Shown here: positions 9,896-26,959 of the stretch, one piece after another
Layout: every line of letters begins with the position of its first letter
Numbering within the stretch: position 1 is the stretch's first letter
Assembly (NCBI GenBank): GCA_964187785.1
Contig: OZ076416.1
Coordinates: 27,776,001 to 27,840,000, forward strand
DNA from: Amphiscolops sp. MND2022
Lineage: Eukaryota
Length of the DNA: 64,000 nucleotides
Direction of reading: 5' to 3'
The notes under the pieces: model-generated
Seen by the model: the letters and a program-made list of their open reading frames with translations, nothing else
Databases searched by the model: none
Told to the model about the DNA's origin: nothing
Program-made: the position numbers and the translations under genes

Positions 9896-10432
9896 AAACA
9901 AGCCGAGAACGGCCAAAGTCGGCGCCATATCTAAGGCTCAAAATTAAAAAGGGGGATCCTTCGGGCTTTGTGAAACTCCAGCTGGTTGCAAAAAATTTGA
10001 AAAAAATCGAAGGGGGGACCCTTTGGAGACATGAAAAAATTTCCCAAAAAAATTTTTTGAATGAGATTTTTGAACAGTGTCACAGTGCCGAAAAATGTAA
10101 AAGGGGGGACCCTCTGCGATTTTTTGACATCCATTGTGTTGCAAAATATCGAAACAAATGAAGGGGGGACCCTCTGGTGCAATCCAAAAAACTTCAAAAA
10201 AAGTGCTGAAAAAAAGTGGGGCTAAGGTGTGTTTTCGAGGTTGTGAACGTCTGTTTTGTTTTTTCTTTTCGTTTTGGACGCGCTTCTGAGGTTGGAGTTG
10301 TTGAGGTTTGAAGTTGTTGAAGTTTGAGGTTGTTGAACAAATGAACAAAAAAGTGGACCTTTCGTGTCTAAAAAAAAACTACCCACTGTAATAGTCGGGC
10401 ACATTTTCTACTAAAATGCGCCGACTAAAAAA
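9896..10432 (-). mobile_element. HINE-like family A copy
   Basis: GCCG-AGAA-CGGC stem (9902-9913) plus AGTCGGCGCCATATCTAAGGCTC at the left. ATAGTCGGG...GCGCCGACTAAAAAA at the right. Confidence 0.7.
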
Positions 10433-10951: not shown

Positions 10952-12292
10952 ATGCTGACAAAAGATTGGGTTATATAACAACTTGCTACTTTTCAGCAGC
11001 ATTCAGAAATGCAAGTGGATTCCACGGAAGTTTTACGGCTTTGTACTTGAGGATGATGGAATAGGAAAGGGACATTTAAATCCCAGTCAAATGAAACTAG
11101 AATTTTGTCTAGACAACTCGAACTTAATATTCCTTTTTCACGCACCATTAGACGTTGTAATTCATCCTCAACTTTCTTTCGAAAAACCGAATCCATGGAG
11201 CGTGTAAATGTTGGTTTAGTACGATTGTTGCAATAAGAATTCAAAATAAGTTTTTTTTCGAACCAATATTTCAAAGTTCGATTGATTCACAAATGAACTG
11301 GAAGTGGAATTTCAAGATCAAATTGAAGACGGGGTCATTTTTGAGCTAAATAGACCAAAACTGAAGTGAAACCAAATTCGTCAAACCAACAGCCCGTTAT
11401 ATCAGTAAAACCAAAGGCACAGCAGTCTCAAAAACACTTCAAATATCAGCGTTTCATTTGAAGCAGTCTTTTCTGTTTACAAGTGCCTGGATTCTGTCTA
11501 TTCGAACGTAATTCATGGCATCTTTCACAGCTTCAAATTAAGGTTTCACAATTTACTGGACAATAAAGTTGCAACCAAACTTTTGACATACATTATCTCC
11601 CAACTTTCAAAGGATAAATTTCAAAGTCTCTAAGTTTCAAAAACCAATGCGTCCTAAAATTCATCGAAATCCAGGTTTTATCCAGGGTATTCAGTTCATG
11701 GAGCAAAAACCGAAAACTCAAATGCAGTCAATTATGCAAAATAATTGAAGTCCCCAGTTTATTTATTTATAATACATGTACGGGAGATTGAATCAAGAAC
11801 TCTAGCGTCTTAACAGAGTTTCAGAAGTAGTTCAACAGAAAGCACGAGTCCAGGGACTATTCAAAGGATTAATTCAACGCTTTTTGGACACTTTTAACTC
11901 GTTCCTAAAAACAACTTTGGCAAACAATTATATTGTCTGCAGGATTCCGTGAATTTACGTCAGTGGCAAAACAAAAAAAAAGTTTTTCCGGGTGTTAAAA
12001 ACGCCCATAACCAAAAGAGTACATAACGAACACAGCCACTACCACCTCACGCGTGCGGTATGCCAATTATAGGGGGGAGGCAGTCCAGTTTGGTTTTCTT
12101 CATGAAAATAAAAAAAAACATGAAAATTAAAATGTGAGTGATACACCGAAACGCAATGCCAATTCAAAAGTTTCACTCTTAAAAATAAAACAGCACTCGC
12201 ACAATACGGTAATGAGACTCGAACTCTTCCGGTCAATCGTAACTCGAAATCAAACAGCCACGGTAAAAAGCTGCACCAAAAGTTAACGCGAC

Positions 12293-12625
12293 AACTTATA
12301 TCTCTACTTTTAAGATGAGTATTTATGGCTGGCGGCTGGATGCAGGAATGGAGAGCAGCCAAGTCTTCGGAACATGGATCACAATCCTCAGATTAGTTCT
12401 CAATCTTCTTATTTGAAAACACAACCATGCAATTCTCTAGTTATTGTCAGCACTGATGTTTTTGTATTAATAAGTGTTATTATAGTTATTTGTTTAAAGA
12501 TGCTGATCAAATAGTTAAAAGGTTAAAATTCTGTCATAGGTAAAATAGTTTTAAGGTCAAATATTTAAGAGTTCTTTCAATCAGTTCTTTTGTCCTCAAC
12601 AACGGAATGTTTCAGCTATGTTACA
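12293..12625 (-). repeat. 3' LTR (333 bp)
   Basis: Direct repeat of 26385-26717 with one substitution seen by eye (AAAATTCTG vs AAAGTTCTG). Element-strand ends are TGTAAC...ATAAGTT. Confidence 0.97.
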
Positions 12626-12634
12626 CTTCCTCTC
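12626..12634 (-). promoter_or_regulatory. Polypurine tract GAGAGGAAG
   Basis: Purine run directly 5' of the 3' LTR on the element strand. Confidence 0.8.
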
Positions 12635-13292
12635 ATCGAAAACCTTCCGGCGTCTGAAAAAGCCATCATACAGTCTGAGGAGTAGTGTAGTGATGATTAG
12701 AAGCTAAAATTGCCAAGTTGAGTAGTCTACTTCCAATAATTCCATTGAAAGAGCCCAAAGAGAAGAGTTTTGGAGAGCAACACAAGTCCCAGTTTCATGT
12801 TGTGATAAAGTTGTATATTTCATCCAGTCCAGTTGAATATTGTAGAGCCAAAGATTACTGCATTTATAGTTTACATATTACTGCAGAAGAAAATTTGTGA
12901 AAGGATTTGTTTTGATCAATCTCAATGATGAATGAATGATTGAACCGAAGGTTCGTTAAGTCAAGCAATGGTGTCGGCTTGGTCTGCTTCAAAGTCTCCG
13001 GTATCGGGAACCTTTTGGTTAATTGTAACTTGACAGTTACTCGGATGTTTTTTGATTGATGATTGAAGTTTTTGAATGGGTTGGCATTGTTTGAATGCAG
13101 TCGTCTCGTATTCAAACATTGAACTGGCCATTCTGGGGTCTAGTGGACTTTGCATGAGCACTTGATCGCAATTAGCAGATGTAGATGGTTCGTTTAGATT
13201 TCTTTTCGATTGTGAACGTGAAAGATGATATATTCGTCCAAATTTTTTGCGAAATTTATCCTCAGCATGAGAATCAGTTGTTTCCAATTTCA

Positions 13293-15461
13293 TCATGGGT
13301 TTAGCTCGCACTCTTTTTTATTTTTATCAAGTAGGGATGGGAACAATTTCGATGCCAGATTGTAGCGATGATAAATGTACATAAAGATCAAGTGCAAAGC
13401 TGTCGATACAATGAACACAGTTAATGTCAGCATGAATGAAATTCGGAACGGAACATACTGATTAAATTCTTTCGTTAAGGCTGGTTTCAAGAGTTTCATT
13501 TCTGATGCATATGGTCTGGCAATGTCGATCATATGTTTGACTTCACGATTCTTTGGTCCTTTTGCTAACTGTAGCTTTACCTCCTTCAATAACTTCACTC
13601 CTGCTTCAGCTTTCGATGTATAGAACGGCAATTCGTCCAAAGGGGGGACTTCCATAACCAATGAAGCGATAGGATTAGGCAGAGAAACTTGCAATTTTAT
13701 TGGTGGAATGTGAGCGCAACTTGATAGATCAGATCGGATTTTGATGTCAGTCATGATTTGCATTCCACATGCTAAAGTGATGAGACATATGCGGCATCCG
13801 CGAAAAGAAGAGCCCTGAACAGATGAAGACGAAACTTCACGAAGGGTAACTGCGTGAGCGGATTGAATTAACCAAATACCATAGCCTAAGTTTGTTGCTT
13901 GTTCTATGGCAGGCAGTTGTACAATTGTAGTATCACATACTGCAAGAGCTTCCGAAGCTGTACTAGAATATAAGGTAGCTAAACAAGACGAGTGTACCAT
14001 CTCTGTTGGAACAGACTCTGAACAGATTCGGTAACGAGATGAGCCGAGACAATGCTCAAACTGTTCTGCAGAGAGGACAGATGACTCCATGTGATCCTCC
14101 GACAAAGCTAAACATGGAGCTTCGATGTTCCATGTAAGAGCCGACTGGGGATCGTCTGGATACGGCATCGGAATTAATTTTGCTTCGTAGACAGTAAAAA
14201 CGGTTTGCTTAGATGCTAGCGGGACGTTGAGGGTCATCAAAAGACCTTCGTTAACCGTAATAGCATCTGCTAAGAGCTTGGAATCGAAGTAAGAGAGCAG
14301 ATCTGACATTGGGATAGCTAAAGACAGCCTATCCTCAGCCGTCGCCTGCTTCATTGCAACACTTCGTAGAATAGCCAATAACGATTCCGTTGGTACCAAA
14401 GACATAGGTAAATGACCTCTAAGTATAACCGGAATCGAATTTAAGATGTTCATGCGGAATGCAAATAAGGCCGCGCGATAGCTCTTAACGCTTGCATGTA
14501 TCATTGCTAGTAGCGAAGATAGGGTATCGAAATTGAAGTTTAGTTGTTGATTCGAAAAAAGCATTCGGTTGCAGTCGCGGAGTACATGAAAATTATGCTC
14601 AAAAACATCAAACTGTTGTTGAATAAGTACCCAGTTTTTGTTCTGCGTATCAACAAGTTCCCTTTGGATGTCGTGAAGGGCCGCCAATTCATTTTCAACC
14701 ATAAAAAATTTTTTGTCCGTAGATGTTGTAAATTCAGTTACATACTGGGTTAAAACGTCCTGGAAGTCTGATAGTTTGCGAATGTTCTCGGCATTTGCCT
14801 TCGCAGCATCTTGACAGGAACCAAAAATGCCTTGTAGTCCACAAGAGTCGGAACTACCGAGGGCCACTCCTCCTCCAAAAAGGCCGACTGCAGCAAGAGC
14901 CGCTAGTCCCACTTGGGATCCACGTCAGTGGCGAGTATTCCGCTGCTGTTGAGGAGGGGAGAGAAACATTGCTGTTTCATTACGTAGGAGGGCAACATCG
15001 AGTTCCGCAGTGTGGATTTCAGTTTCTATTTGTTGTAACATCCAGGTGACATTGAACGGCGTTGAATTTGTTGAAAAGTGACTTGAAAAATCCAAGGGAC
15101 AAAAAACAGATGGAAGTTCCCACATCGACGCGAATTTGGCCATTAAGGCCACAATATCTGGTTTAAGTGCGAAGTCATAAGTCGGAAAGGGGACTAAAAA
15201 TTCAATTTTTATAAATTTTTCCGCGAGCAAGATTTTACCGCGTTCATGGAACAGAACGCCCTTTTCTTGGATTTCGTTCGGGTTATTGGAGGCTTCTAAA
15301 TTAGAAAGCCACTCACTTCGAACTGAAGCAGGGGTGAAGAAAACCAGTAGGAACAAAACCAACATCGATCCGTTGTTCTTCGTGGGCTGTTTTCCCCTTT
15401 TTTTGTTTTTTTTTTGAAAGTTAGCGTAAAAGAGAAAATTGTCGACAGAATACTGTATCAA
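13293..15461 (-). pseudogene. env: Envelope / class I fusion glycoprotein, split by one in-frame TGA
   Basis: ORFs 14925-15461 and 13293-14912 are in the same frame. Order: signal peptide MLVLFLLVFFTPASVRS, RNTRH*RG furin-like site, fusion peptide GLAALAAVGLFGGGVALG, heptad region, Cys-rich region, C-terminal TM segment ISFMLTLTVFIVSTALHLIFMYIY. Confidence 0.88.
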
Positions 15462-15757
15462 CTAGTTCGATCGACCTCAAATGCAAGAATGGCACTTTAG
15501 GTATTTTTGGGCGGGTTTTGTGGATTTTTGAAAGATCACCAGAAATGTGATTCGATTTGTTTTCAATATCCGGTGCCCCTTTGATATTTACAAATTTCGA
15601 GATGTTAAAGTTTGTTTTGTCAAGTCATGTTTACGGTACTGGTTGTTTGACCTGTGATTGAAAACTCAGATTTTCGATTGCGGACTAGTGAAAGTGACCA
15701 TGAAATGAGCTGAATGTTTATTCAGTTGTCAAGCGTTTGTCCGAGTTTTTCAGTAAA

Positions 15758-16156
15758 ATGAAAGTGCTCGGCAGTGCCTTGATTACCATGTTATGGTTGT
15801 GGTATGCTGCATCGCAGGCGTGCGAGATGCAAGATTGGCAAGGCCATCGGATTTACTGCTGTGCCAACGGAACAGCTATTGAAAGCAAAATTGGACAAAA
15901 AGTATGGGTGGCGCAAAAGCCCAGAATTTGCAATTTGCCTGCGACGACAAAAATGTCTGAACAAACTAATCTGCCTAAAGTCATCATTTTGACTGTGATA
16001 ATTGTTGCCAGTGTCTGTGTCTGCCTGTGGAAGTGTCCGGTTCAAAAAGTCAGACGAATCATACGTTTTTGTGAAACAGAAACAGAAGACGAAAATCAAG
16101 TCAATGAAATGGAAGTCAAAGTAGTGAGAAAAATGCCGAAAAGCCAATCCTTTTAA
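15758..16156 (+). CDS. Small type-I membrane protein (132 aa), antisense inside the LTR element
   Basis: ATG at 15758. Signal peptide MKVLGSALITMLWLWYAASQA, 4-Cys ectodomain with an NGT sequon, TM segment VIILTVIIVASVCVCLW, charged tail. Confidence 0.6.
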   Translation: MKVLGSALITMLWLWYAASQACEMQDWQGHRIYCCANGTAIESKIGQKVWVAQKPRICNLPATTKMSEQTNLPKVIILTVIIVASVCVCLWKCPVQKVRRIIRFCETETEDENQVNEMEVKVVRKMPKSQSF

Positions 16157-16298
16157 GAGGCAACTCAATGAGGCGACATGATTATGAAAGTCTAAATTGC
16201 AGTTACTATTAATCGCAGGTCTTGTTTACTGCTAGGATATTGCAGTGGAAAATTGTGCCGTCGGGCAAAACAATTTGTTATTTGTTAAGAGTTTGCAG

Positions 16299-16905
16299 TT
16301 TTTAGTCGGCGCATTTTCCTTTAAGGAAAAAAGCCCGACTATTACAGTGGCTAGTTTTTTTTTCTTTTTTTTTCGTCAGACCACAGAGCTCATCGCGTAT
16401 GTACCACTTTTTACAGAAACTGCTAAGTTCACTCAGGCCAAGTTCCACCAATGCAAACTTACTGCAAAGGGTCCCCCCTTTCGTTTTTTACCTTTTTTAC
16501 GTAACCTACAAAACCGGAAGACTCCAAAGGGTCCCCCTTTCAATTTTTTTTCGGCACTGTGCGAATTTTTTTTCGAAAATTTTTAATTTTTCAAAAGAGT
16601 CCCCCCTTCGGATTTTTTGATATTTTGCAACAGAAAGTATGTTAATGAATCCCAAAGGGTCCCCCCTTTTCATTTTTCGGCACTATGCGACGTTTTCGAA
16701 GTTTTTTTCAAAAAAAATTCAAAAAAAATTTCAAAAAAAATTTCAAAAATTTTTTTGTTTCCAGTCATATCGAGCATGAAAGGCACACTTTGGGTGTCTC
16801 GAAAGTGTTTTCAAAGCTTTTCATGAATACATCCTGGGCATATTTAGAAAACTGAGCTTTTTGAGCCTTAGATATAGCGCCGACTTTAGACGTTCCCGTC
16901 TTGTT
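16299..16905 (+). mobile_element. HINE-like family A copy nested in the LTR element
   Basis: TTTTTAGTCGGCGC...CCCGACTAT at the 5' end. GCGCCGACT plus GACG-TTCC-CGTC (16889-16900) plus TTGTT at the 3' end. Confidence 0.75.
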
Positions 16906-17148
16906 ATTTCTACTTTTGAGTTTGAACAGTTCGAAAATTTAGAATTGAAAGAATTCAGTCGCCAGTATTTGTAGCTGCCAGATAATGCGTAGAATTTCCC
17001 TTCCAGCAAACTCGTACGCGGAGCAATATTCCTAAATGAACGTCACGCAGAGGTCAAATGTGAAGGCAAAGAGCAAACCAAAATTCAAGCTAAAGTGAAA
17101 GAAAACGTTTGAAAACAAAGGCGTGTAAATTAAGTTATTTCAGGAAGC

Positions 17149-18362
17149 ATGGAAAACACTCTGTATAGAGCAATCTGTGAAATGAAAAAGAACAATGAAG
17201 TAGATAAATTGGTTTGCCAAACAAAGGGTCAAAAAGATGTATGGGTGAAACGACTCAGGCGTTTCACTGTAAATGGAATGGGAGTGCTGTTCTGGAACGG
17301 TCAAAAGGTGCCAACATTAGAGGAACTGACTACCGTCCTATGGCCTCGCCATGCAAATGAGAAAAAACACATACAAGATGAAGGTTTCTTTCGGAAAGTA
17401 TTGTCCAACAAAGGATATGTGTTGCCGTCATTCATCGGGGGCCTCGAGCGGGCCGTAAAAACGTAGGTAGTGATATTTGGTGAAAACAAAGTCGTAAGAG
17501 GACAAAAACGGAGTTATCATTTTGTAGATTCTTGCACGATTGTCCAGAGTGCTTCTGGACAAGGCAAGCGGGATATCGTTGGCAGAGAGCAACGAGCGTG
17601 TCACGAAGAGAGCGACAAATTGCTTGTGAGAAATTGGGACTGACTTGGAAGAAAATGACAGACGAGCCAGAGGATGGAACAGTATTTGGATTAGGCGAAC
17701 CGCCAGTGGCATCCTGTAAAGCGATTCTAGCCCAAGGTGGTGGGAAGTGCTGGGCATCCAGCGTGTTTTATTTTCTTACTGGGAAAAAAAGTGGTAAGCG
17801 TACGTTATCTTAAAGGGGTTATCTGCAGAACTCTACTGATGTGCGAGAGATGAGATAAGTGTTGTTCCAGATAAAAAAAAGGACGGCTCTGCGTTGAAAC
17901 GAATCAGAGATACAATCGGAAATCACATGAAAACAGCCGAATTTCAAAAGTTTTGTATAGAGTGCCTGGAATATGCTCCCAATGAGTTCGAACTCAATGC
18001 TGTACTCCAATCAAATCTCGACATTAGTGAACCTTGGGTAAGACCATGTACAATAGGTAACTGAAACGATAGACGAGTAACTCAACTACATTATCGTGTT
18101 ATAGATGTTGGGGACTGCTCAAGTGCTAGGATGGGACATGTTAGTCTTCTGGAGATACTCGGAAAAAAAGGATGGATTCGCTATCCAGCCAAAACAAGGG
18201 GCCCGTCATCAAGGGCCGCATTTCTCTTTCACGTGATTCATTCCGAGAAGGAGAAAATTTCATTGTGAGCCACTAATAGATTGGCCAATCGAAAAGTTAG
18301 TTGTGACAAATTATGAACATGTAAAAGGAAAGCTGGAGTGTAATGCCGTTATCTATATGTAG
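17149..18362 (+). CDS. Four-exon antisense gene: H2C2 Zn-binding-like N-terminus plus OTU-like cysteine protease (about 334 aa)
   Basis: Exons 17149-17462, 17528-17793, 17871-18037 and 18105-18362, joined in frame by GT-AG introns of 65, 77 and 67 nt. Motifs: H-x5-H...CPEC, QGGGKCWASSVFYFLTG, MLGTAQVLGWDMLVF, FHCEPL. One TGA at 18234-18236 in exon 4. Confidence 0.65.
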
Positions 18363-18906
18363 CGACGATCTAACGTATGAAGGAAATGGGGAGTGCTATA
18401 AGCCACCCGCAAAGAAGGCAAGAAAATACTGGAACTGATCAGATCACTGACTGATTCATCATCTCATATCAAAAGTCACAAAAGACATCGAACTCAGGAA
18501 GTTTAAGCTTTTGTTCACGAAATTCTTATAATACTAGTAGGGAAGCAAGCGGATTGCTGGCAGAGGGGCTCGAGCCAAGTACAATGGTCTTTCAGCTGCG
18601 AAAACCATCAAAAGATGTAAAATTTTTCTGAAAACAATGAGATCTCGAGGCGCGCCGTACGGCGAGGAAAATTTTTTTTCTTTCACGATTCCACTAAAAA
18701 GGGTGTCACTCGAAAGAGCATGGTAAAAAAGGGGGGGACACCGAAAATCCAGGTTGGGTACGAAAATTTAACAGTGAAAAAAGTTCTCTTGAAAAGGGCG
18801 ATTTTCATGTTTGTTGTGTTTTTGGTAATACGTTAACTGAAAGAAGAGTAAAGAGCGACGTCTAGTGAGTGAAAAGCGATTGCATGACCCCAAGAACGAT
18901 CGGTCA

Positions 18907-19323
18907 TTAACGTGGGGGCTGAATGATTGTAATAGTAATCTGAGACTTTGAGAAAGTACGATATAAAAGGGAAAAAACAGTTGGCCAATGTAATCGCTCA
19001 AGACCGCTTCCGAGTCGCGGGATGCTAAGTGCTCGAATTTTATGGCGCTCTAAATGCTGACGAAGGGCCATCAAACTCAATTGAAGTGTTTCGTAGTTAG
19101 GTTGATGAAAAAATCGTTTTTTGGTCACTAAATTATAGATATAACGTTGATGAAGTCTGTCAAAATAAGAGACCAGTGATCCCGGCGGTAAACGTTTTTG
19201 AGTGTTAAAACGAAGCTGGCGAAGCGCAGGGTGGCGGTAAGCGATGGCAGATGCTAGACCGCGTTTCATATGAAAGTCAGCGGAAACACAGTGAGCTATA
19301 GACTCTGTAGAGTCTAGGATATT
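18907..19323 (-). CDS. TARG1/OARD1-like macrodomain (frameshifted C-terminal end of pol)
   Basis: NILDSTESIAHCVSADFHMKRGLA...YIYNLVTKKRFFHQPNYETLQLSL...LSIPRLGSGLERLHWPTV follows the OARD1-family pattern (SLAHCIS.D..MG.GIA...YIYYLITK.R...P.Y..L..SL...SMPRIGCGLDRL.W). Confidence 0.85.
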   Translation of the reverse strand, partial: NILDSTESIAHCVSADFHMKRGLASAIAYRHPALRQLRFNTQKRLPPGSLVSYFDRLHQRYIYNLVTKKRFFHQPNYETLQLSLMALRQHLERHKIRALSIPRLGSGLERLHWPTVFSLLYRTFSKSQITITIIQPPR

Positions 19324-20346
19324 CGAAAGAAAAGCAAAAGTTCGGATGACTGTCAGAGGAAATAGAGTTTAAAACATTAGATGAGGACAGTCTTTTCTTC
19401 AAATTACGGAAATTATAGCGTGCTTTTACTTCCTTTTGGTGCTGAAGATACTCCTGAGGAGATTGCGGTGTCAGCTGTTGCGTGGTAGTTGGGTGGACCC
19501 GTGGACTTGCATCAGAAGGAGGTCGAGTTCGTTGACAAGAGTCGAGCAAGAGTGTGCGCTTATCTGCCTTCAGGAAGCTTGTACCTGGAACCTGAGTCAG
19601 CGCTGTTCTAGGTGACGGTTGTCCATATGATTTAGGTCCACGTCCAATAAAGACTGGTACTGTTTCACGATTCTCATCGAAATTCAAAGTGCAATTAGTG
19701 CGAGATGAGGTAGTCGGAAGTTTCGGACGGACTGTACGTGATTCTTGCTCGGCCAAGGTGGGTGTAGATGCACCTGCGTAGCGTGCCTGGTCGGCATCTG
19801 AAGTCGTTCGTGGAGTGACGGAGAATCTGTGGATTCATCGTCAAGATATGGCACAAGCGCTGGTTGTTGTTCTTCGTCCTGGGCTGGCAGTGCGGGAATT
19901 GCTGGAGCTGCTGCTGTAGCTGGTAGGGGTGGAACTGCTGGCCCTGGAGCTGGTCCCATCGGGATAACAGCTGGTGCAATAGGAAAACTAAGCGAAACCG
20001 TAACCGGTGGAGGCTTTTCTTCGTTGTGAGCCACCCTAGTTTCCTCTGAGGGAGGTAACAGAAGAGTTGGAATGCTTTCATCGAAAATAGCTGGTTCTCC
20101 ACGGAATCGCCCAAGCATAGGATCGCGTTTAAATTTCTCCTGGTCAATTTGCGGTAAGTCGTCAACTTGATATTGCGGTACAACCGGTCGGAGACGGATT
20201 CGATGTACACATTGAGTATAATTTGTACCGACCTTGCGGATGATGTAATTTGAATTGGTTAAAACTTGCTCGACGCGATACAATGGTAGCCAGATAGGAA
20301 GGAACTTACTCGAAAAATCGGACTGCGTCATTAGTTTTGGATTCAA
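19277..20346 (-). pseudogene. pol C-terminal extension (integrase tail plus Pro/Ala-rich linker) in two frameshifted pieces
   Basis: 19684-20346 continues the integrase C-terminus (LYRVEQVLTNSNYIIRKVGT...VHRIRLRP). 19277-19756 continues the linker towards the macrodomain. Confidence 0.7.
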
Positions 20347-23300
20347 AAGAAGACAAAACGAGAATTGTTTTAGAGGTTGCGCTTCGTAATCTTAAGGTAG
20401 CTTTGTAATCATAATATGCGCGGTATCTATTATACATTTCAGTCAATTTACTTTTTGCTGCAGAAAATTTCTGTAGCATGGCATCCTGCAATGCAAGCAC
20501 ATATTCTGTAGTCGGTTGCGCACGTGCAAGCGAACTGTTATTAAACCTGAGATCTAAAGGTTTCAGAGGCTCTCGACAATGAAACAAGGTGGTCGGGCTC
20601 GTTCCGATTGCAAAATGATAAGTATTATGAATGAAAGCTGCAAGTTGTACATACTTGTACCAGTCGTTCCACTGCTGAGTGGTGTTTAGTTTCAAGATTC
20701 GTTTAAGGGCGCTATGCGAGCGCTCCACAACACCGACAGTTTGCGGGTGCTTTAGACTGGCATGTTCTAATTTTATTTCCAAAAGTTTAGTCAATTCGTG
20801 CATCAATTCACTCACAAAAGTAGTACCCAAGTCGGATAAAATTGTTTTTGGAAGATAACTATGACGGAAAAATATCGACGCAAGTTCTCGTGCAACGGTT
20901 TCTGACCTCCCATTAGTAAGTGGGACTGCAAAAAGATATTTTGTAAAAACATCAATACCCGTAAGAACATAACGGTAGAGCAGAGACTGTAACGGACCGA
21001 CAAGGTCAATTTGTAACATTTCGCCCGGGTAAGATTTCAACAAGGAGACCGGTTGTAACGGAGTTTTCAGATTTTTGCTTGGTACACGTTTCAGTTGCAA
21101 ACATTGTAGACAGTTTTGGATAGTTGACGTTAAGTATTCTGTAAAATTCGGAAAATAAAAGCGTTTTCTAAATTCTTCAACCGTTTTATTGATTCCCATA
21201 TGGCCTGCTGTCGGCGAGTTATGCAAGCGGTAAATTACTTCGCGCCATAGGGATTTAGGGACACAGAACTGTTTGTGTTGCACTTTTCCTTGATCGTCAT
21301 AAAAAAGGCGATAAAGAACTTTGTCCTGAATGATTAGGCGTGGAAACTGTTTACGATATTTTCGCAAAGCTATCGGTAAATTTGGCGACATGTCCGGCGA
21401 GCCTCGGTCTTTCCATTGCATTACTTCACGAATGATCTCGTCTTGATTTTGTACTAGAGCGAGGTCTATTGGCTCTGACCGGTTGGGCAAATCATCAAGA
21501 ATGTCGCTGAATTCTTCTGACGAGACTAAGTTTATTTGATTTATTTGACAGAAAGAGTAAAAGCCAGTGATGTCAAGAGACGGGGTAGTCTGCGCTTCGG
21601 TTGTTTTCTGTAAAAACTGTTCGTAGAGACCAAATTCTTTCAATTGTGAAATTAGGCGTTCGTCAGCCTGATCGTCAACAGATTCCGGAAAAGGTGATCT
21701 ATCCGAAATATTTGATAAAGCGACATCAGGAGATTTCGCTTCGGTTGCTATTTCAATATCTTTAATAGGTATACGATCAGTTAATTTGAGAGACAGGGTT
21801 AGAGTAGGGTCTGTTTGCATTCGTGATAAAAAATCTGCGGCCGAATACGCTTCACCAGGAATATGAGCAAGGAGAATGTTGAAAGACAAAACTCTATCCA
21901 AACAGTTCCATAACGATGGATGAATACTTTTAGATTGGAAAAATTGCGTGAGACTACGGTTATCGGTTAAGACTAGCACAGGTTTAGTTGCGCCCCATAT
22001 AAAATGTGCAAAATGGTCTAAGGCGAAATAGAGAGCAAGAAATTCTTTATAGTAAACCGAAAATTTCAATTGCGTCGGACCAAACAACCGAGATCCAAAG
22101 GAGACCGGCGCGTATACTTTTTTCTCTTTTCCTTGTTGATCTAACAAGTAGTCCTCAATCATGAGGACAAAGCCTGTGCCATGGTAACTAGCGTCACAAA
22201 GGAGTACGTATTGGAGACCAGGTTTTGCCAATCGCAAAGTAGAGTTGGTAGCATTTCGTAAATCGGTTTTCAATAAATCTAGTGCTTCGCTATGTTCTTT
22301 AGTGGTTTTAAATTCTACATCTTTTCGCAAAAGTTTGTAAAATGGTAGCAATTTTTGGCCCAAGTTGGGCATGAACGAACGAAAAAATTGGACAAATCCA
22401 ATCAATCTTTTCACTTGTTTAACAGTTTCTGGCATTCTGATTTTTTCGAGAAATTTGTTTATTTTGTCAGCTTCTGGTGAGATTCCTTTAGGTGTTATGG
22501 TGCTTCCCAAATAATCAATCTTGGTCGTCCCAAATTCACATTTATGAGCAGACAATTTTAATCCTGATGCACGCAGGCAATCAAAAATTTTTGTTAAAGC
22601 AGGAGTCATCTCATCAAAATTGTTTACTCCCATGGCAATGTCGTCCATGAATTGAGTACAAACATTGGCAGCAAGACATTTATCTAAGTAGTGTTTAACG
22701 AACGAACTAAATCCGGTGACGGATTTGTTCAGGCCTTGGGCTAAACAATTATAAGCAAATGTACGCGAAGCGAAATTAAATGCCAGCAACTGTACCGAAA
22801 GGTCATCTGCCATTTGAACGCAATGGTATGCTTGCGAACAATCAAGTTTACAAAATAACTTCTTTCCCGCAAAATGGTTTGTCGCATCTGTCATATTTGA
22901 AATGAGGAAATTGCTATTTAAGTAATCATGGCGTAGGAGGTGATTGACTCTTCTGAGATCGATAAGTATGCGAAGCTTGCCATATGGTTTGCGATGTACA
23001 AATATCGGACTAGAATATTTGGAGTGTGACAACGTAGTTATGATGTTAAAATATTGTAATAACGCCAATTCAACTAAAATTTCATCACGCAAATGAATCG
23101 GTGCTGGTGGACCTTGAACGTATACCGGAAGTTGATGAGCAGGCGTTAATTTGATCTTCAATTCTGTGTTATACCCAACATCAAAGCGATGTTTTGCAAA
23201 CACGTCATGATATTCAACAAGAAAGTCCTCCAATTTTGATTTTTCATCAGCGCTCAAAACACATGTATCCCACGTAAATTTTTTCAAACATTCTTGTCTA

Positions 23301-24415
23301 TCGTGTGGATTGCTTTTTGGGTTTATTTTTTCACAACGTTGAAGTTGCAATATTTGGTCGTAAATTTCACGTTGCAACGGTGACAAATTTGAAAGATCTG
23401 TACATGTTTCGGGAGTCGGAAACCAAAGTTTTGAGTAATCTGGTGGCGGCCGACCATTGTCAGTGTCAAATTTCTGAAAGTGGATATCTTGAATGAGCTG
23501 ATTAAGTTCATTTTCAAAATCGTCGGGTCTTCTAATTTTTGCGAGTGCCAATAATTGTGGATCTATTTCAAGGAGATACTCAGCCTGTGACTCGCTCAAA
23601 ATTTCGAAATGTGCAATTTGTTTTTTGCTATTTAGCGTAATCTGGGAATCGGACAAATTGATCGCTGATATGTATATTTTATTGTCATTATCCATCTTGC
23701 TCAGAGACGAAGTTAATGCAACATTGGCTTTGTCCTCCAGATTCTTGTTTGGAATTACTAATCCTGTGCAATTGGCGAACTGGTCAGTATATTCATCCAA
23801 ATAGCATTCAAGGAGGACTTGTTGCTGCGGTCCAATATTGACTTTTTTGCTCAATAGGATAGGTATATTTTTCATTTTTTTCACAAATTGTCGTTTTTTT
23901 CCAGCGTCCGGTTTCATTTCATTGAGTTGAACCGTAAAGTCGGGCAGTTTCAGTAAGTTGTTTTTGGGGTCTATCGTGATATTCTGTTTTTTAAAGGAAG
24001 AGTTTCCCAAAATTACACTATTCATTTTTGGTAGCACGAGAAAACTGTCCGTAAAGGAATGAATTCCAATACAGAATGTGAGATTCACCTGATTGTCAAC
24101 TGACACTCGTTGTCCTGAAGCCATGCGGACAGACGTATAATTTGGAGTTTCATTTTTAATTAAGTCGGGATGACTCAAACGTAATTCGTCGTATAAATTT
24201 TGAGGCAATGCATTAGCGCAGGCGCCTGTATCAATGAGGGCTCTCCGACGAATGTTCGGAGAAAATTTCAATTTAACGTAGGAAAGATTTTCACCTTCAA
24301 GAGGCAAAACAGCGCATATATCTGGCTTTTTTAATTCTATGTTACATGTGTGTGGCTCATTGGACTGGTTTTCATGTAGAGAAATAGACGGTGGAATCTT
24401 GTGCTGCGTTTTTAG
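20306..24415 (-). CDS. pol: Pol polyprotein (aspartic protease, RT, RNase H, integrase)
   Basis: ALIDTGA (PR), LDCSQAY and QFMDD (RT), LCDASYHG/TDNRSL (RNase H), H..H..C..C, QIDLVGP, SDLG and ER..S (integrase). The frame is open from the frameshift site at 24415. Confidence 0.95.
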   Translation of the reverse strand, partial: LKTQHKIPPSISLHENQSNEPHTCNIELKKPDICAVLPLEGENLSYVKLKFSPNIRRRALIDTGACANALPQNLYDELRLSHPDLIKNETPNYTSVRMASGQRVSVDNQVNLTFCIGIHSFTDSFLVLPKMNSVILGNSSFKKQNITIDPKNNLLKLPDFTVQLNEMKPDAGKKRQFVKKMKNIPILLSKKVNIGPQQQVLLECYLDEYTDQFANCTGLVIPNKNLEDKANVALTSSLSKMDNDNKIYISAINLSDSQITLNSKKQIAHFEILSESQAEYLLEIDPQLLALAKIRRPDDFENELNQLIQDIHFQKFDTDNGRPPPDYSKLWFPTPETCTDLSNLSPLQREIYDQILQLQRCEKINPKSNPHDRQECLKKFTWDTCVLSADEKSKLEDFLVEYHDVFAKHRFDVGYNTELKIKLTPAHQLPVYVQGPPAPIHLRDEILVELALLQYFNIITTLSHSKYSSPIFVHRKPYGKLRILIDLRRVNHLLRHDYLNSNFLISNMTDATNHFAGKKLFCKLDCSQAYHCVQMADDLSVQLLAFNFASRTFAYNCLAQGLNKSVTGFSSFVKHYLDKCLAANVCTQFMDDIAMGVNNFDEMTPALTKIFDCLRASGLKLSAHKCEFGTTKIDYLGSTITPKGISPEADKINKFLEKIRMPETVKQVKRLIGFVQFFRSFMPNLGQKLLPFYKLLRKDVEFKTTKEHSEALDLLKTDLRNATNSTLRLAKPGLQYVLLCDASYHGTGFVLMIEDYLLDQQGKEKKVYAPVSFGSRLFGPTQLKFSVYYKEFLALYFALDHFAHFIWGATKPVLVLTDNRSLTQFFQSKSIHPSLWNCLDRVLSFNILLAHIPGEAYSAADFLSRMQTDPTLTLSLKLTDRIPIKDIEIATEAKSPDVALSNISDRSPFPESVDDQADERLISQLKEFGLYEQFLQKTTEAQTTPSLDITGFYSFCQINQINLVSSEEFSDILDDLPNRSEPIDLALVQNQDEIIREVMQWKDRGSPDMSPNLPIALRKYRKQFPRLIIQDKVLYRLFYDDQGKVQHKQFCVPKSLWREVIYRLHNSPTAGHMGINKTVEEFRKRFYFPNFTEYLTSTIQNCLQCLQLKRVPSKNLKTPLQPVSLLKSYPGEMLQIDLVGPLQSLLYRYVLTGIDVFTKYLFAVPLTNGRSETVARELASIFFRHSYLPKTILSDLGTTFVSELMHELTKLLEIKLEHASLKHPQTVGVVERSHSALKRILKLNTTQQWNDWYKYVQLAAFIHNTYHFAIGTSPTTLFHCREPLKPLDLRFNNSSLARAQPTTEYVLALQDAMLQKFSAAKSKLTEMYNRYRAYYDYKATLRLRSATSKTILVLSSFESKTNDAVRFFE

Positions 24416-25725
24416 TTTTTTTGATTTTGATTGAACGGCATTTGGGCTCCTCGTTGTGGCGGGTTACCTTGCGCAGTACAATCTTTTGCTAGATGATTCG
24501 GATATCCGCAATTATAGCAAGTATGTGTTGATTGTTGTGTATAAGGCATGTAATGCGGATCCGGAGTAAAAACTTCAAATGTAGTTTGCGATGAACCTTG
24601 ATTGGAATTCCCTTGTTGAAAGTTTTCCTGATTATGATTTGACCATTGTTGCTGACTATTTTGATTCTGATTAAAATTTGAATTTTGGTAATTTTGATTT
24701 GACTGATTGTAATTTCTGCCGTAATTGTTCTGCCAAGGTCGTCCTCGAACTTGGTAACCTCGACCTCGGTTTCCACGGTTATTGCCGCGATACCGACCAC
24801 GGTAATTTCCTCGATTTCCGCGATAGCCTTGGCCACGATAGTTTTGAGAGCCGCGTTGCGAATTGTTTTGGTTTTGCTGATTTTGTAACTGAGTGGTAAA
24901 ATTCGTAGCTTGCTCTTCTAGTTTTTTGGACATTTCGTTCAGTCGATTGTCCATAGTTTCTTGACTATGGCTCAATTTTGTAAGAGCTGTAACTAAAGTA
25001 TCAGATACTGAAGGGCGCACTTCACTGAAAGCATCCATAACCGAATCTTCAACTTCACAAAGGTTATAGATCGAAAGTTGTTTCCGAGCAAATATACACA
25101 AATCTTCAACCGTTGTATTTTCCGGTTGTTCCAAAAGTTTCGCTCGAAGCCAGCCCGGCATATTTTTTATAAATTGTCTCCGAATCTGAGTGGAGCGCGC
25201 TTGTTGCGCTGAATGAATTATTTCGGCTCTTCTGGCGGTTTCAGAATCAAATCGTGTTTGTTCGACTGCTGCGTCCGGCGCGGCACCGTCAATTGGTGCT
25301 ACTGCGGGTGGATTTGGGTCGGGATAAGCTTTAAGTGCTTTCGTTTGTAACGTGACTAAAAAATTCTCTGGATTGTCTGTTTTGGGATCGAATTTTAAGT
25401 TTTCCAATTTAAGAACATGCAATTCCTGAAGTCTTGGATTACAAAAGTGATCACGAAGAGCTGTCAAAGAGAGGTCTAAGTCCGCACGTGTTGCTACCGG
25501 TAGTGTTTGAAAATAGCGGAGCGCAGCGTCTCTAAGATGAAGTTGTAAAAAGTTGGCTTGCTGCGCTTGCGGTACCGCAGCTACTGCTAAGATACTTCGT
25601 AACAAATGTTCGAATTCACGAAAATTTTCCTTTTCTAAACCCGAGTAGGGTGTTAGCGAGAGTTGAGGTAAAGCAGCCATGATTTGAAAAGTTAAGTGTA
25701 AAATAAAGAGTGACGAATAAGACAA
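24412..25725 (-). CDS. gag: Gag with C-terminal CCHC zinc knuckle
   Basis: 437-aa ORF upstream of pol, with an RG/N/Q-rich nucleocapsid region and CYNCGYPNHLAKDC. Confidence 0.92.
   Translation of the reverse strand: MSYSSLFILHLTFQIMAALPQLSLTPYSGLEKENFREFEHLLRSILAVAAVPQAQQANFLQLHLRDAALRYFQTLPVATRADLDLSLTALRDHFCNPRLQELHVLKLENLKFDPKTDNPENFLVTLQTKALKAYPDPNPPAVAPIDGAAPDAAVEQTRFDSETARRAEIIHSAQQARSTQIRRQFIKNMPGWLRAKLLEQPENTTVEDLCIFARKQLSIYNLCEVEDSVMDAFSEVRPSVSDTLVTALTKLSHSQETMDNRLNEMSKKLEEQATNFTTQLQNQQNQNNSQRGSQNYRGQGYRGNRGNYRGRYRGNNRGNRGRGYQVRGRPWQNNYGRNYNQSNQNYQNSNFNQNQNSQQQWSNHNQENFQQGNSNQGSSQTTFEVFTPDPHYMPYTQQSTHTCYNCGYPNHLAKDCTAQGNPPQRGAQMPFNQNQKN
24415..24421 (-). promoter_or_regulatory. -1 ribosomal frameshift slippery site A_AAA_AAC (gag-pol)
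   Basis: Heptamer is in the correct phase immediately before the gag TAA. The -1 frame is stop-free and continuous with pol. Confidence 0.8.
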
Positions 25726-26373: not shown

Positions 26374-26385
26374 CTCCTGTCACCA
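26374..26385 (-). promoter_or_regulatory. Primer-binding site TGGTGACAGGAG (tRNA-Leu-like)
   Basis: Begins on the last base of the 5' LTR. Differs at one base from the complement of the vertebrate tRNA-Leu(CAG) 3' end (TGGTGTCAGGAG). Confidence 0.7.
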
Positions 26386-26717
26386 ACTTATATCTCTACT
26401 TTTAAGATGAGTATTTATGGCTGGCGGCTGGATGCAGGAATGGAGAGCAGCCAAGTCTTCGGAACATGGATCACAATCCTCAGATTAGTTCTCAATCTTC
26501 TTATTTGAAAACACAACCATGCAATTCTCTAGTTATTGTCAGCACTGATGTTTTTGTATTAATAAGTGTTATTATAGTTATTTGTTTAAAGATGCTGATC
26601 AAATAGTTAAAAGGTTAAAGTTCTGTCATAGGTAAAATAGTTTTAAGGTCAAATATTTAAGAGTTCTTTCAATCAGTTCTTTTGTCCTCAACAACGGAAT
26701 GTTTCAGCTATGTTACA
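26385..26717 (-). repeat. 5' LTR (333 bp)
   Basis: Direct repeat of 12293-12625, followed by the TSD CGAC. Confidence 0.97.
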
Positions 26718-26959
26718 CGACATTTTCGACATTGGGTTAAAACTCCTATTTACTGACGATTATTTCACACAGATCCGAAACCATGTTTTTGTCCGAGGAT
26801 AACCATCCATTCAGACTTCTCTACGTCAAATTCGTCAGTGTAAAAAAAGCTGGTACAGTCGACCTCGATATAACGAACCATTGATACAACGTAACTCTCG
26901 TTAAAACGCAATTTGATTTCTAAACCAATAGAAATCAAGTACACATTCAAGTACAGAAC

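What the first reader, a model, noticed from the sequence alone, without database searches (positions are those of the whole stretch)
17149..18362. Intron-containing antisense OTU-like gene inside an LTR retroelement
Seen: three short GT-AG introns (65, 77, 67 nt) join four exons in frame. The product has H-x5-H...CPEC (like an integrase Zn-binding domain), then QGGGKCWASSVFYFLTG, a helix ending LKRIRDTIGNHM, MLGTAQVLGWDMLVF and FHCEPL. Exon 4 has one TGA (18234-18236) with HCEPL in the same frame beyond it. Two compensating 1-nt indels in the G4 (18198-18201) and A4 (18254-18257) runs would give an unbroken ORF reading ...AAFLFHVIHSEKEKFHCEPL. Established: OTU proteases have GDGNC...H-Y/F-E/D motifs. 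Antisense introns survive retrotransposition because they are not spliced from the genomic RNA. Inference: this is an element-encoded deubiquitinase with its own promoter. The DGNC loop is atypical (GGKC).
Basis: partly seen in the sequence, partly recalled or inferred. Interest (0 to 1): 0.85.

Follow-up and report, generated by a model that had tools for sequence, protein, structure and literature searches.

The report
Antisense spliced OTU protease gene in retroelement
A 14.4-kb virus-like LTR retroelement carries, on the strand opposite its own genes, a conserved four-exon gene for a protein joining an integrase-like zinc-finger domain to an OTU-type (ubiquitin-removing) cysteine protease domain; the copy in this window is broken, but intact copies under purifying selection exist elsewhere.

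Summary
The gene model is real. Three GT-AG introns at the stated coordinates are kept in all 10 aligned copies. Exons are more conserved than introns, and dN/dS is about 0.07. The host element (12293-26717, minus strand) has near-identical LTRs, a 4-bp target duplication, gag, pol and an env-like ORF3.

No exon piece hits Pfam OTU. A chained exon 2-4 profile, however, found proteins in a 1.84-billion-protein library at E down to 7e-10. All 20 contiguous hits tested carry Pfam OTU above threshold at the matched region, several inside Ginger1-like (H2C2+rve+OTU) or Helitron-like proteins. Local hhalign against these domains gives 99.5% probability (E 3e-22). The catalytic Cys, His and Glu are conserved, but the Cys loop is G-G-x-C, never D-G-N-C. 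The N-terminal HHCC domain is probably integrase-derived (weaker evidence).

A promoter and enzyme activity remain untested.

Also found: a second antisense gene for a small membrane protein, a TARG1-like macrodomain at the pol C-terminus, and an antisense cassette far more diverged than the element backbone.

The parts
12293..12625 (-). 3' LTR of the element (333 bp). TSD CGAC at 12289-12292. Purine-rich tract just inside at about 12626-12637.
   Evidence: Direct repeat pair with 1 mismatch in 333 bp; flank inspection.
26385..26717 (-). 5' LTR. TSD CGAC at 26718-26721. tRNA-primer-binding-like TGGTGACAGGAGCA at about 26372-26385.
   Evidence: The PBS assignment is an inference from sequence.
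24412..25725 (-). gag ORF (437 aa) with a CCHC zinc knuckle.
   Evidence: Pfam zf-CCHC, E 2.4e-5.
20306..24307 (-). pol ORF (1333 aa): RT, RNase H, Integrase_H2C2, rve, in Ty3/gypsy order. Weak dUTPase-like hit at aa 152-233.
   Evidence: Pfam.
18907..20346 (-). Broken C-terminal continuation of pol, in three ORF pieces. The last piece (18907-19269) is a TARG1/OARD1-like macrodomain.
   Evidence: Intact copies have a 1628-aa pol. Frame breaks lie near 19326 and 19806-19815. Profile A12 against PDB TARG1 gives E 6e-28.
17149..17462 (+). Antisense gene, exon 1 (aa 1-104 plus 2 nt): N-terminal helices, a beta-hairpin, and H68 and H74 of the HHCC motif.
   Evidence: In the AF2 model of a relative, the exon-1 part has pLDDT 75-93.
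17463..17527 (+). Intron 1 (65 nt, GT..AG).
17528..17793 (+). Exon 2: C110-x2-C113 (17541-17552), the linker with the C-x-K-L-G-L motif shared with transposon OTUs, and the Cys loop GGGKC with the putative catalytic Cys179 (17748-17750).
17794..17870 (+). Intron 2 (77 nt, GT..AG).
17871..18037 (+). Exon 3: helical part of the OTU-like domain.
18038..18104 (+). Intron 3 (67 nt, GT..AG).
18105..18362 (+). Exon 4: beta-sheet part of the OTU-like domain, with the His-x-Glu motif (His 18261-18263, Glu 18267-18269). In this copy the family frame is lost within about 18164-18175 and regained within about 18250-18257. A TGA at 18234-18236 lies in the out-of-frame read.
17135..17143 (+). Polypyrimidine-AG (3' splice-site-like) motif 5 nt upstream of the ATG, present in all copies.
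15758..16156 (+). Second antisense gene: 132-aa protein with a hydrophobic N-terminal segment (signal-peptide-like by inspection; scored as such in two relatives), a small Cys-rich part with an NGT site, a transmembrane segment and a tail ending RSQSF/KSQSF. It is also preceded by a TTTTTCAG acceptor-like motif (15746-15753).
   Evidence: Conserved ORF of 132-137 aa in L001, L006-L008 and L011. No Pfam hit.
13293..15461 (-). ORF3, env-like class I fusion glycoprotein, in two pieces split by an in-frame stop at 14925-14927.
   Evidence: The intact 780-aa version in L012 has a hydrophobic N-terminal stretch read as a signal peptide, a furin-like site followed by a hydrophobic fusion-peptide-like segment, and a C-terminal TM. 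No Pfam hit.
15770..18740 (.). Hypervariable antisense cassette (both antisense genes plus spacers). It is 65-70% identical between copies whose flanks are 90-97% identical.

Best explanation
SHOWN. Window 12293-26717 (minus strand) is a full-length, recently inserted, env-bearing Ty3/gypsy-type LTR retroelement of an animal genome. Between pol and env, on the opposite strand, it carries a conserved four-exon gene. Intact copies of this gene encode a 314-336-aa protein. The C-terminal 190 residues (a pre-OTU linker plus the protease domain proper) are homologous to OTU-family cysteine protease domains. The closest relatives are the OTU domains fused to Ginger1-type (integrase-like) transposases and to Helitron helicases. 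Cys, His and Glu sit at the catalytic positions, within a non-canonical G-G-x-C loop. The N-terminal 115 residues carry a conserved H-x5-H-x35-C-x2-C motif that is collinear with the integrase N-terminal zinc-binding domain.

INFERRED.
(1) The introns survive retrotransposition because they are antisense in the genomic RNA and so cannot be spliced from it.
(2) The gene derives from a Ginger1-like transposase that kept its N-terminal domain and OTU domain but lost the DDE core.
(3) The protein is a deubiquitinase or ubiquitin-like-protein protease. Its integrase-like N-terminal domain brings it to the element's integrase/pre-integration complex or to DNA. There it removes ubiquitin-type marks, protecting element proteins from degradation or restriction, or steering repair at the integration site.
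(4) It may act alongside the TARG1-like ADP-ribose hydrolase domain fused to Pol.

The window's own copy has lost the frame in exon 4, so it cannot make the His-bearing part. If the function matters, intact sister copies would have to supply it in trans.
For: Element anatomy.

Gene reality: splice sites are kept in 10/10 copies, exons are more conserved than introns, and exon lengths are fixed while intron lengths vary. Spliced ORFs are intact in L001, L006 and L009-L012. dN/dS is 0.065-0.07. The position and orientation are the same in all 13 loci that carry it.

OTU homology:
- Profile A8 found 203 proteins at E<=1e-3 among 1.84 billion.
- 20 of 20 contiguous remote hits tested carry Pfam OTU PF02338 above the gathering score at the matched region.
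- hhalign of the spliced family against these domains gives 99.0% (E 3.5e-18) and, with 140 family rows, 99.5% (E 3e-22). The second alignment covers the Cys loop and the His motif.
- The AF2 model of an exon3-exon4 read-through ORF has pLDDT 81.6, and the top 50 Foldseek PDB hits are all OTU domains.

Residue conservation: catalytic Cys 62/70, His 22/23, Glu/Asp 23/23.

HHCC domain: H 21/21 and 20/21, C 37/40 and 41/42. hhalign against the element's own integrase H2C2 gives P 6e-4, score 29.4, against 10-18 in 21 controls. hhalign against the Ginger1-like protein P0226 gives 76% probability, E 2.2e-5, starting from residue 7.

Ginger1 transposases with H2C2+DDE+OTU are described in PMC2836005.

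Macrodomain on Pol.
Against: - No exon piece or read-through ORF reaches any Pfam OTU or Integrase_H2C2 score. PDB sequence searches found no OTU.
- The full spliced protein could not be given to Pfam, AF2 or Foldseek, so Cys-His juxtaposition was not modelled.
- Foldseek E-values are weak (best 0.036, TM 0.35-0.46). The AF2 alignment contained true OTU proteins, so the model is not independent of the sequence evidence.
- The positions of the canonical Asp and Asn of the D-G-N-C loop are Gly (56/72, never Asp) and Glu/Lys. The protein could therefore be a weak or altered enzyme.
- No transcript evidence: no spliced product was found among assemblies in the protein collection.
- Many copies are broken (window, L002, L005, L007, L008, L013).
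- The N-terminal assignment rests on moderate scores and one Ginger1-like sequence.
Confidence: 0.75

Rival explanations
1. The protein has an OTU fold but is not a protease. It would act as a ubiquitin-binding or scaffolding pseudo-enzyme. Alternatively, its integrase-like N-terminal domain would work as a dominant-negative partner of the element's integrase, giving copy-number control.
For: The Cys loop lacks the near-universal Asp and Asn (G-G-x-C). An isolated integrase N-terminal domain without a DDE core could poison integrase multimers (inference from the known role of the domain in intasome assembly).
Against: Cys, His and Glu are kept at 89-100% across deeply diverged lineages under dN/dS of about 0.07. 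That is unexpected if catalysis were dispensable. A few members keep G-N-C or G-Q-C.
Confidence: 0.15
2. It is a nested fragment of a Ginger1-like DNA transposon that landed in one ancestral retroelement and is carried passively, without function for the element.
For: The closest relatives of both domains are Ginger1-type proteins. The DDE core is missing, as in a deleted transposon.
Against: The reading frame, the three splice sites and the catalytic residues have stayed under purifying selection. This holds through divergence that saturates synonymous sites and across element lineages with 50-97% pol identity. The gene occupies the same slot in all copies. The cassette is exchanged among backbones rather than decaying uniformly.
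Confidence: 0.05
3. The antisense transcription unit matters as RNA, and the coding capacity is incidental. The RNA would pair with genomic RNA to feed small-RNA silencing or to regulate env and pol expression.
For: Antisense transcripts of LTR elements with suggested regulatory roles are discussed for plants and Drosophila (PMC7264820).
Against: Protein-level constraint is clear: low dN/dS, fixed exon lengths, conserved motifs, and introns freer than exons.
Confidence: 0.04
4. Chance ORFs or a mis-assembly artefact: there is no gene.
For: This copy has a stop and frame changes. The breaks lie at or near homopolymer runs, which long-read assemblies mis-call.
Against: All the comparative evidence above. 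The nearest copy from another assembly (L013, 8 mismatches in 1386 nt) is also broken in the same A-run, by a different length, and has a separate nonsense change. At least part of the damage is therefore real.
Confidence: 0.01

Closest known systems
Ginger1 DNA-transposon transposases (H2C2 zinc finger + DDE integrase core + GPY/F + C-terminal OTU; Bao, Kapitonov and Jurka 2010, PMC2836005)
   Same: The same two end domains occur in the same order (integrase-type N-terminal zinc-binding region, then OTU). The family profile hits such proteins directly: P0226 has H2C2+rve+OTU, P0288 and P0294 have rve+OTU, P0205 and P0290 have SH3_Tf2-1+OTU. The N-terminal similarity to P0226 starts at residue 7. 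These genes may also contain introns.
   Different: There is no DDE (rve) core and no GPY/F/SH3 domain. The gene is not flanked by inverted repeats and sits as an antisense passenger inside an LTR retroelement. The Cys loop is G-G-x-C instead of D-G-N-C.
OTU domains of animal Helitron/Helentron Rep-helicase proteins
   Same: Same OTU subfamily, with the shared pre-OTU C-x-x-L-G-L linker motif and the W-x-R-Y-P strand. Hits include P0237 (Pif1-type helicase + 3 OTU) and a Lingula anatina cluster that also holds a 2450-aa helicase protein.
   Different: In those proteins OTU is fused to the replication protein of a DNA transposon, not encoded as a separate gene in a retroelement.
Viral OTU deubiquitinases (nairovirus L-protein vOTU; arterivirus PLP2)
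   Same: A mobile or viral genome encodes an OTU protease. Nairovirus vOTU structures are the top Foldseek matches of the partial model. From my own knowledge, they strip ubiquitin and ISG15 to blunt innate immunity. That role is the model for the function proposed here.
   Different: Those are RNA-virus polyprotein domains with a canonical D-G-N-C loop. Similarity is at fold level only (7-17% identity).
Antisense additional ORFs between pol and the 3' LTR of plant Ty3/gypsy elements (Grande gene23, RIRE2, Retand; PMC7264820)
   Same: Same slot and orientation in the element, and conserved across copies.
   Different: The plant aORFs have no recognisable domains or known function. Here the product has two identifiable domains, the gene has three conserved introns, the host is an animal, and a second antisense gene accompanies it.
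Antisense accessory genes of complex retroviruses (HTLV-1 HBZ; own knowledge)
   Same: A spliced, antisense-encoded accessory protein of a retrovirus-like genome.
   Different: HBZ is a bZIP regulator transcribed from the 3' LTR. It shares no homology and has no enzymatic domain.

Membership tests
OTU cysteine proteases (Pfam PF02338) | Match to the Pfam OTU model at or above its gathering score | tested here: inconclusive
   Exon pieces and natural read-through ORFs gave no hit even at E<=10. The complete spliced protein has no reference and could not be scanned.
OTU cysteine proteases (Pfam PF02338) | Significant profile-level homology to proteins that are bona fide OTU members | tested here: met
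   The A8 profile hits have E down to 7e-10 in 1.84 billion proteins. 20/20 contiguous hits tested are Pfam-OTU positive at the matched region. hhalign gives 99.0-99.5%.
OTU cysteine proteases (Pfam PF02338) | Catalytic Cys at the start of the first helix, and a His followed two residues later by Asp/Asn/Glu near the C-terminus | tested here: met
   These align with GDGNC and H-F-E/D/N of the OTU hits. Cys 62/70, His 22/23, Glu/Asp 23/23. In the window copy the His motif is cut off from the Cys by the frame change.
OTU cysteine proteases (Pfam PF02338) | Canonical D-G-N-C Cys loop | tested here: not met
   The Asp position is Gly in 56/72 rows and never Asp. The Asn position is mostly Glu or Lys, with Asn in 2/70.
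OTU cysteine proteases (Pfam PF02338) | OTU fold with Cys and His juxtaposed | tested here: inconclusive
   Only a partial model was possible (exon 3 + in-frame intron 3 + exon 4 of L006; pLDDT 81.6). The top 50 PDB matches are all OTU, but E>=0.036 and TM is 0.35-0.46. The Cys loop is not in the model, and the MSA included OTU proteins.
OTU cysteine proteases (Pfam PF02338) | Isopeptidase activity on ubiquitin or ubiquitin-like modifiers | not testable with these tools
   Needs a biochemical assay.
Integrase N-terminal zinc-binding domain (HHCC; Pfam PF17921) | Match to the Pfam Integrase_H2C2 model | tested here: not met
   No hit for exon 1 or for the read-through ORFs P0121 and P0124.
Integrase N-terminal zinc-binding domain (HHCC; Pfam PF17921) | Conserved H-x(3-7)-H-x(23-32)-C-x2-C | tested here: inconclusive
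   All four ligands are conserved and H-x5-H and C-x2-C fit. The H-to-C spacer is 35 residues, slightly beyond the usual range (own knowledge of the motif).
Integrase N-terminal zinc-binding domain (HHCC; Pfam PF17921) | Profile or fold similarity to integrase N-terminal domains | tested here: inconclusive
   hhalign against the element's own H2C2 gives P 6e-4, above 21 controls. Against Ginger1-like P0226 it gives 76%, E 2.2e-5. The best local Foldseek matches are the PFV and Ty3 integrase N-terminal parts, but E>=0.037.
Ginger1 DNA transposon | DDE (rve) catalytic core in the protein; terminal inverted repeats | tested here: not met
   Only about 60 residues lie between C-x2-C and the OTU Cys loop, and there is no rve hit. 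The gene lies inside an LTR element. Inverted repeats around the gene were not searched for.
Ty3/gypsy-type LTR retroelement with env (host element) | LTR pair with target duplication; gag with CCHC; pol ordered RT-RNaseH-integrase; env-like third ORF | tested here: met
   The env-like features of ORF3 rest on sequence inspection only.

The most novel reading that the evidence does not exclude
This is a lineage of invertebrate endogenous retroviruses with a kit of accessory functions. The kit holds an antisense, intron-bearing cassette (an HHCC-OTU deubiquitinase plus a small membrane protein) and a TARG1-type ADP-ribose hydrolase fused to Pol. It would parallel the protease/DUB-plus-macrodomain pairing of some RNA viruses (own knowledge). 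The cassette is swapped between element backbones by recombination. It is kept as several anciently diverged types, as expected if it is engaged in an arms race with host ubiquitin- and ADP-ribose-based defence or repair signalling.
Probability: 0.3. Interest if true: 0.85.

Novelty: new variant of a known kind. Interest (0 to 1): 0.72.

Why it matters
OTU proteases are known in DNA transposons (Ginger1, Helitrons) and in RNA viruses. Antisense extra ORFs are known in plant LTR elements, but none of those has a recognisable function. Here an animal retrovirus-like element carries an antisense, spliced gene with two identifiable domains. That makes the function of an antisense retroelement gene directly testable, using ubiquitin probes and integrase binding.

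It also suggests how a DNA-transposon gene was recycled by a retroelement. Together with the Pol-fused macrodomain, it points to retroelements manipulating ubiquitin and ADP-ribose signalling. I found no report of either domain in LTR retroelements in the searched library.

Tried and rejected
- Pfam on single exons and on natural read-through ORFs found nothing.
- PDB sequence searches with exon 4, exon 3-4 and exon 2-4 profiles gave only chance hits.
- A first attempt to chain all four exons in one alignment failed, because MAFFT stacked unrelated pieces. It worked after dropping exon 1 and trimming the exon-3 tails.
- Short exon-2 heads for the N-terminal alignment also mis-stacked.
- The word-based protein search with an exon 1-2 profile found only ORF fragments from ENA assemblies. 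It found no annotated or transcript-derived full-length protein.
- Host identification failed. A CLIC-like host exon gave only unnamed hits, and Rfam found nothing in the window.
- I considered RNA editing of a sense/antisense duplex as the cause of the cassette's divergence. I rejected it because the A/G over C/T excess is the same in the cassette (157:87) and in the backbone (134:79), and because dN/dS is low.
- No AATAAA lies within 600 nt downstream of the stop in most copies.
- The bacterial promoter scanner was not used, as it does not apply here.
Full report
**The element.** A pair of 333-bp direct repeats (12293-12625 and 26385-26717) differs at one base. The pair is flanked by the 4-bp duplication CGAC. 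On the minus strand between them lie:
- a gag ORF with a CCHC knuckle (24412-25725);
- a 1333-aa pol ORF with RT, RNase H, Integrase_H2C2 and rve in Ty3/gypsy order (20306-24307);
- a third, env-like ORF further down.

In an intact relative (L012, 780 aa) this third ORF has four features: a hydrophobic N-terminal stretch that I read as a signal peptide, a furin-like site followed at once by a hydrophobic fusion-peptide-like segment, 13 cysteines, and a C-terminal transmembrane segment. This is the layout of a class I fusion glycoprotein. That assignment is an inference from sequence features, since there is no Pfam hit. The element is therefore retrovirus-like. Neighbouring host ORFs in related loci carry animal-type domains (Tetraspanin, HTH_animal, CLIC-like). 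The species could not be identified.

**The observation.** The four exons, the three GT-AG introns of 65, 77 and 67 nt, the motifs and the TGA are all as described.

**Comparative evidence that the gene is real.** Pol relatives came from the protein search. I fetched thirteen related loci from two ENA assemblies, ERZ25074608 and ERZ25071366.
- Twelve of the thirteen carry the gene. It is always between pol and ORF3 and always antisense to them. L004 lacks it.
- In a 10-copy DNA alignment, all 30 introns keep GT and AG.
- Exon lengths are 314, 266-269 and 167 nt. Exceptions are L002, which differs by a multiple of three, and L007/L008, which are one base short in exon 3. Intron lengths range from 62 to 99 nt.
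- Mean pairwise identity is 57-64% in exons and 36-41% in introns.
- Spliced ORFs are intact in L001 (336 aa), L006 (318 aa) and L009-L012 (314 aa).
- dN/dS is 0.065 (window vs L006) and 0.07 (L009 vs L012). In the other pairs synonymous sites are saturated.

**State of the window copy.** Against the intact copies, the window leaves the family frame within about 18164-18175 and returns to it within about 18250-18257. The conserved GWIRYPA...AAFLFHVIHSE stretch is thus out of frame, and the TGA at 18234 belongs to the wrong-frame read.

The nearest copy, L013, has 8 mismatches in 1386 aligned bases. It is broken in the same A-run by a different length, and it also has a nonsense change in exon 3. 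L002 and L005 have in-frame stops. Homopolymer runs are thus recurrent break points. Whether some of these breaks are assembly errors needs raw reads.

The window's pol C-terminal part (breaks near 19326 and 19806-19815) and its ORF3 (stop at 14925-14927) are also interrupted.

**What the protein is: the C-terminal half.** Single exons gave no Pfam or PDB hits. A spliced protein cannot be passed to the tools by reference, so I looked for natural ORFs in which an intron happens to be in frame and stop-free.
- P0151, P0130 and P0137 span exon 2, intron 2 and exon 3.
- L006:8822-9256 spans exon 3, intron 3 and exon 4.

With these as scaffolds, MAFFT chained exon pieces from eight loci (the window, L001-L003, L005, L006, L008 and L009) into one alignment of exons 2-4 (A8).

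This profile, searched against 1.84 billion representative proteins, gave 203 hits at E<=1e-3. Besides exon-sized fragments of the same family, dozens of hits are contiguous proteins that cover the profile from the pre-Cys linker to the last strand in a single stretch.
- I scanned 20 of them, and all 20 carry Pfam OTU above the gathering score at that place.
- Their architectures are telling: Integrase_H2C2+rve+OTU (P0226), rve+OTU (P0288, P0294), SH3_Tf2-1+OTU (P0205, P0290), H2C2+OTU (P0283, Nucella lapillus) and Pif1-helicase+3xOTU (P0237).
- Named members come from Lingula anatina, Mytilus edulis, Nucella lapillus and Engraulis encrasicolus.
- These are the Ginger1-type and Helitron-type OTUs described by Bao et al. 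(PMC2836005).

Locally, hhalign of the unaltered spliced products of the intact copies against the OTU regions of these hits gave 99.0% (E 3.5e-18). With 140 family rows it gave 99.5% (E 3e-22) over columns 125-309. In that alignment GGGKC aligns with GDGNC, W-I-R-Y-P with W-L-R-Y-P, and F-H-C-E-P-L with H-F-E/D/N-x-V.

Across cluster representatives the Cys is kept in 62/70, the His in 22/23 and the acid in 23/23. The canonical Asp position is Gly (56/72, never Asp), and the Asn position is mostly Glu or Lys.

An AF2 model of the L006 exon3-intron3-exon4 ORF has pLDDT 81.6 and pTM 0.75. It shows helices followed by a four-stranded sheet. All top 50 PDB matches are OTU domains: nairovirus vOTUs, OTUD1/3/5, OTULIN, Cezanne and bacterial OTUs. 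Their E-values are weak (0.036 or more) and TM is 0.35-0.46. The model lacks the Cys loop and contains 21 intron-coded residues. Its alignment included true OTUs, so it corroborates the sequence result rather than testing it independently.

**The N-terminal half.** H68, H74, C110 and C113 are conserved in 21/21, 20/21, 37/40 and 41/42 rows.
- hhalign against an alignment of 105 integrase H2C2 regions (the window's own pol plus 104 pol relatives) aligns all four ligands, with P 6e-4 and score 29.4. A reversed control and 20 column-shuffled controls score 10-18.
- Against the Ginger1-like protein P0226 the match is better (76%, E 2.2e-5). It begins at residue 7 and takes in the region upstream of the zinc ligands. 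This rests on one sequence.
- AF2 of a read-through relative (P0121) folds the exon-1 part confidently (pLDDT 75-93) and the rest poorly.
- The best local Foldseek matches are the N-terminal parts of PFV and Ty3 integrases, but none is significant.

I conclude that the domain is probably integrase-derived, and that the gene is most simply a Ginger1-like transposase gene that lost its DDE core. This is an inference.

**How it probably works.** The logic that antisense introns escape splicing of the genomic RNA is established knowledge (own knowledge). It fits the conservation of the introns through many rounds of retrotransposition.

Function is inferred from homology. I propose a cysteine isopeptidase for ubiquitin or a ubiquitin-like modifier, tethered by an integrase-type N-terminal domain. 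Its likely targets are element proteins or host factors around the pre-integration complex, or ubiquitin signals at the integration site. This follows the proposal made for Ginger1 OTU/Ulp1 domains (PMC2836005).

The atypical Cys loop leaves room for altered specificity or for a pseudo-enzyme.

No promoter is shown. Instead every copy has a pyrimidine-rich (C/T)AG motif 4-8 nt before the ATG. The second antisense gene has the same motif. This suggests a shared upstream leader exon or trans-splicing.

1. A second conserved antisense gene lies at 15758-16156. It encodes a 132-137-aa protein with a hydrophobic N-terminal segment (signal-peptide-like; it scored in L001 and L006 but not in the window copy), a small Cys-rich segment with an NGT site, a transmembrane helix and a conserved C-terminal tail.
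2. The last 130 residues or so of intact Pol are a TARG1/OARD1-like macrodomain. Its profile hits PDB 2l8r, 4j5q and 4j5r at E 6e-28. Pfam Macro scores only 15-17 bits. In the window this domain is the detached ORF 18907-19269.
3. The segment holding the two antisense genes (about 15770-18740) is only 65-70% identical between copies whose LTRs, ORF3, pol and gag are 90-97% identical.
   - Pol dS between the window and L008, L006, L001 and L009 is 0.09-0.29. For the same pairs, the antisense gene has dN of 0.10-0.31 and saturated dS.
   - The relationships are incongruent. The window's pol is closest to L008, while its antisense gene is closest to L006, L007 and L013.
   - The simplest reading is recombination that shuffles anciently diverged cassette types among backbones. 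A region-specific mutation bias was not seen.

**Literature.** In the searchable library I found OTU domains reported for Ginger1 and Helitrons. I also found antisense extra ORFs of unknown function in plant Ty3/gypsy elements. I found no report of an OTU or a macrodomain in an LTR retroelement. Absence from this library is not proof of novelty.

**Verdict.** The details of the damage and the 'own promoter' claim are not supported. I file the protein as an OTU-superfamily homologue with a non-canonical Cys loop. It is not a Ginger1 transposase, because it has no DDE core. Enzyme activity remains unproven.

Noticed in passing
window 15758-16156 (+): A second conserved antisense gene in the same element. 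It encodes a 132-aa protein with a hydrophobic N-terminal segment (signal-peptide-like by inspection; scored as such only in the L001 and L006 copies), a small Cys-rich part with an NGT site, a TM helix and a conserved ...SQSF end. It is present in L001, L006-L008 and L011. No Pfam hit.
   Followed up: partly
window 18907-19269 (-); intact in L012:9398-9880 (-): The C-terminus of Pol is a TARG1/OARD1-like macrodomain (PDB 2l8r, 4j5q, E 6e-28). In the window it is detached from pol by frame breaks near 19326 and 19806-19815. I found no literature on macrodomains in LTR retroelements.
   Followed up: partly
window about 15770-18740: The antisense cassette is 65-70% identical between copies whose backbone is 90-97% identical. 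Cassette and pol relationships are incongruent, which suggests recombination between deeply diverged cassette types.
   Followed up: partly
window 17135-17143 and 15746-15753 (+): A pyrimidine-rich ...CAG acceptor-like motif lies 4-8 nt upstream of the ATG of both antisense genes and is conserved in all copies. This hints at a shared leader exon or trans-splicing.
   Followed up: no
window 13293-15461 (-): The env-like ORF3 is split by an in-frame stop at 14925-14927, at the position of the furin-like site of intact copies. The intact 780-aa form has class I fusion-protein features.
   Followed up: partly
window 23600-23850 (-), pol aa 152-233: Weak dUTPase-like match in the N-terminal part of pol (E 0.0018, 18.5 bits, below the cutoff of 22). 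One remote pol relative (P0087) has a precomputed dUTPase domain.
   Followed up: no
window about 16300-16740, also 26957-27006, 9899-10203, 27053-28064, 30359-30493, 31441-31504: A short dispersed repeat family (GGGGGGACCC-containing units). One member is nested in the element upstream of the OTU gene, and many lie in the flanks and in other loci.
   Followed up: no
window 39063-41915 (+): An A32-like packaging ATPase ORF (39063-39791) lies next to an rve integrase ORF (40920-41915). This pairing is typical of Polinton/Maverick elements.
   Followed up: no
window 54200-56734 (+), 30790-31407 (+): Another reverse-transcriptase ORF (RVT_1, E 7e-37) and a DUF659 ORF, so the window is rich in mobile elements.
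   Followed up: no
L001:6736-14617: Two overlapping pol ORFs in tandem (1095 and 1538 aa). The window's pol region aligns twice to this stretch (window 21082-26717 and 18907-23565, the second overlapping the first), indicating a partial internal duplication in that copy.
   Followed up: no
exon 3 A-run (window 17873-17881) and exon 4 A-run (18165-18171): Homopolymer A-runs are recurrent frame-break points among copies: L007 and L008 in exon 3, the window and L013 in exon 4. These may be mutation hot spots or long-read assembly errors.
   Followed up: partly
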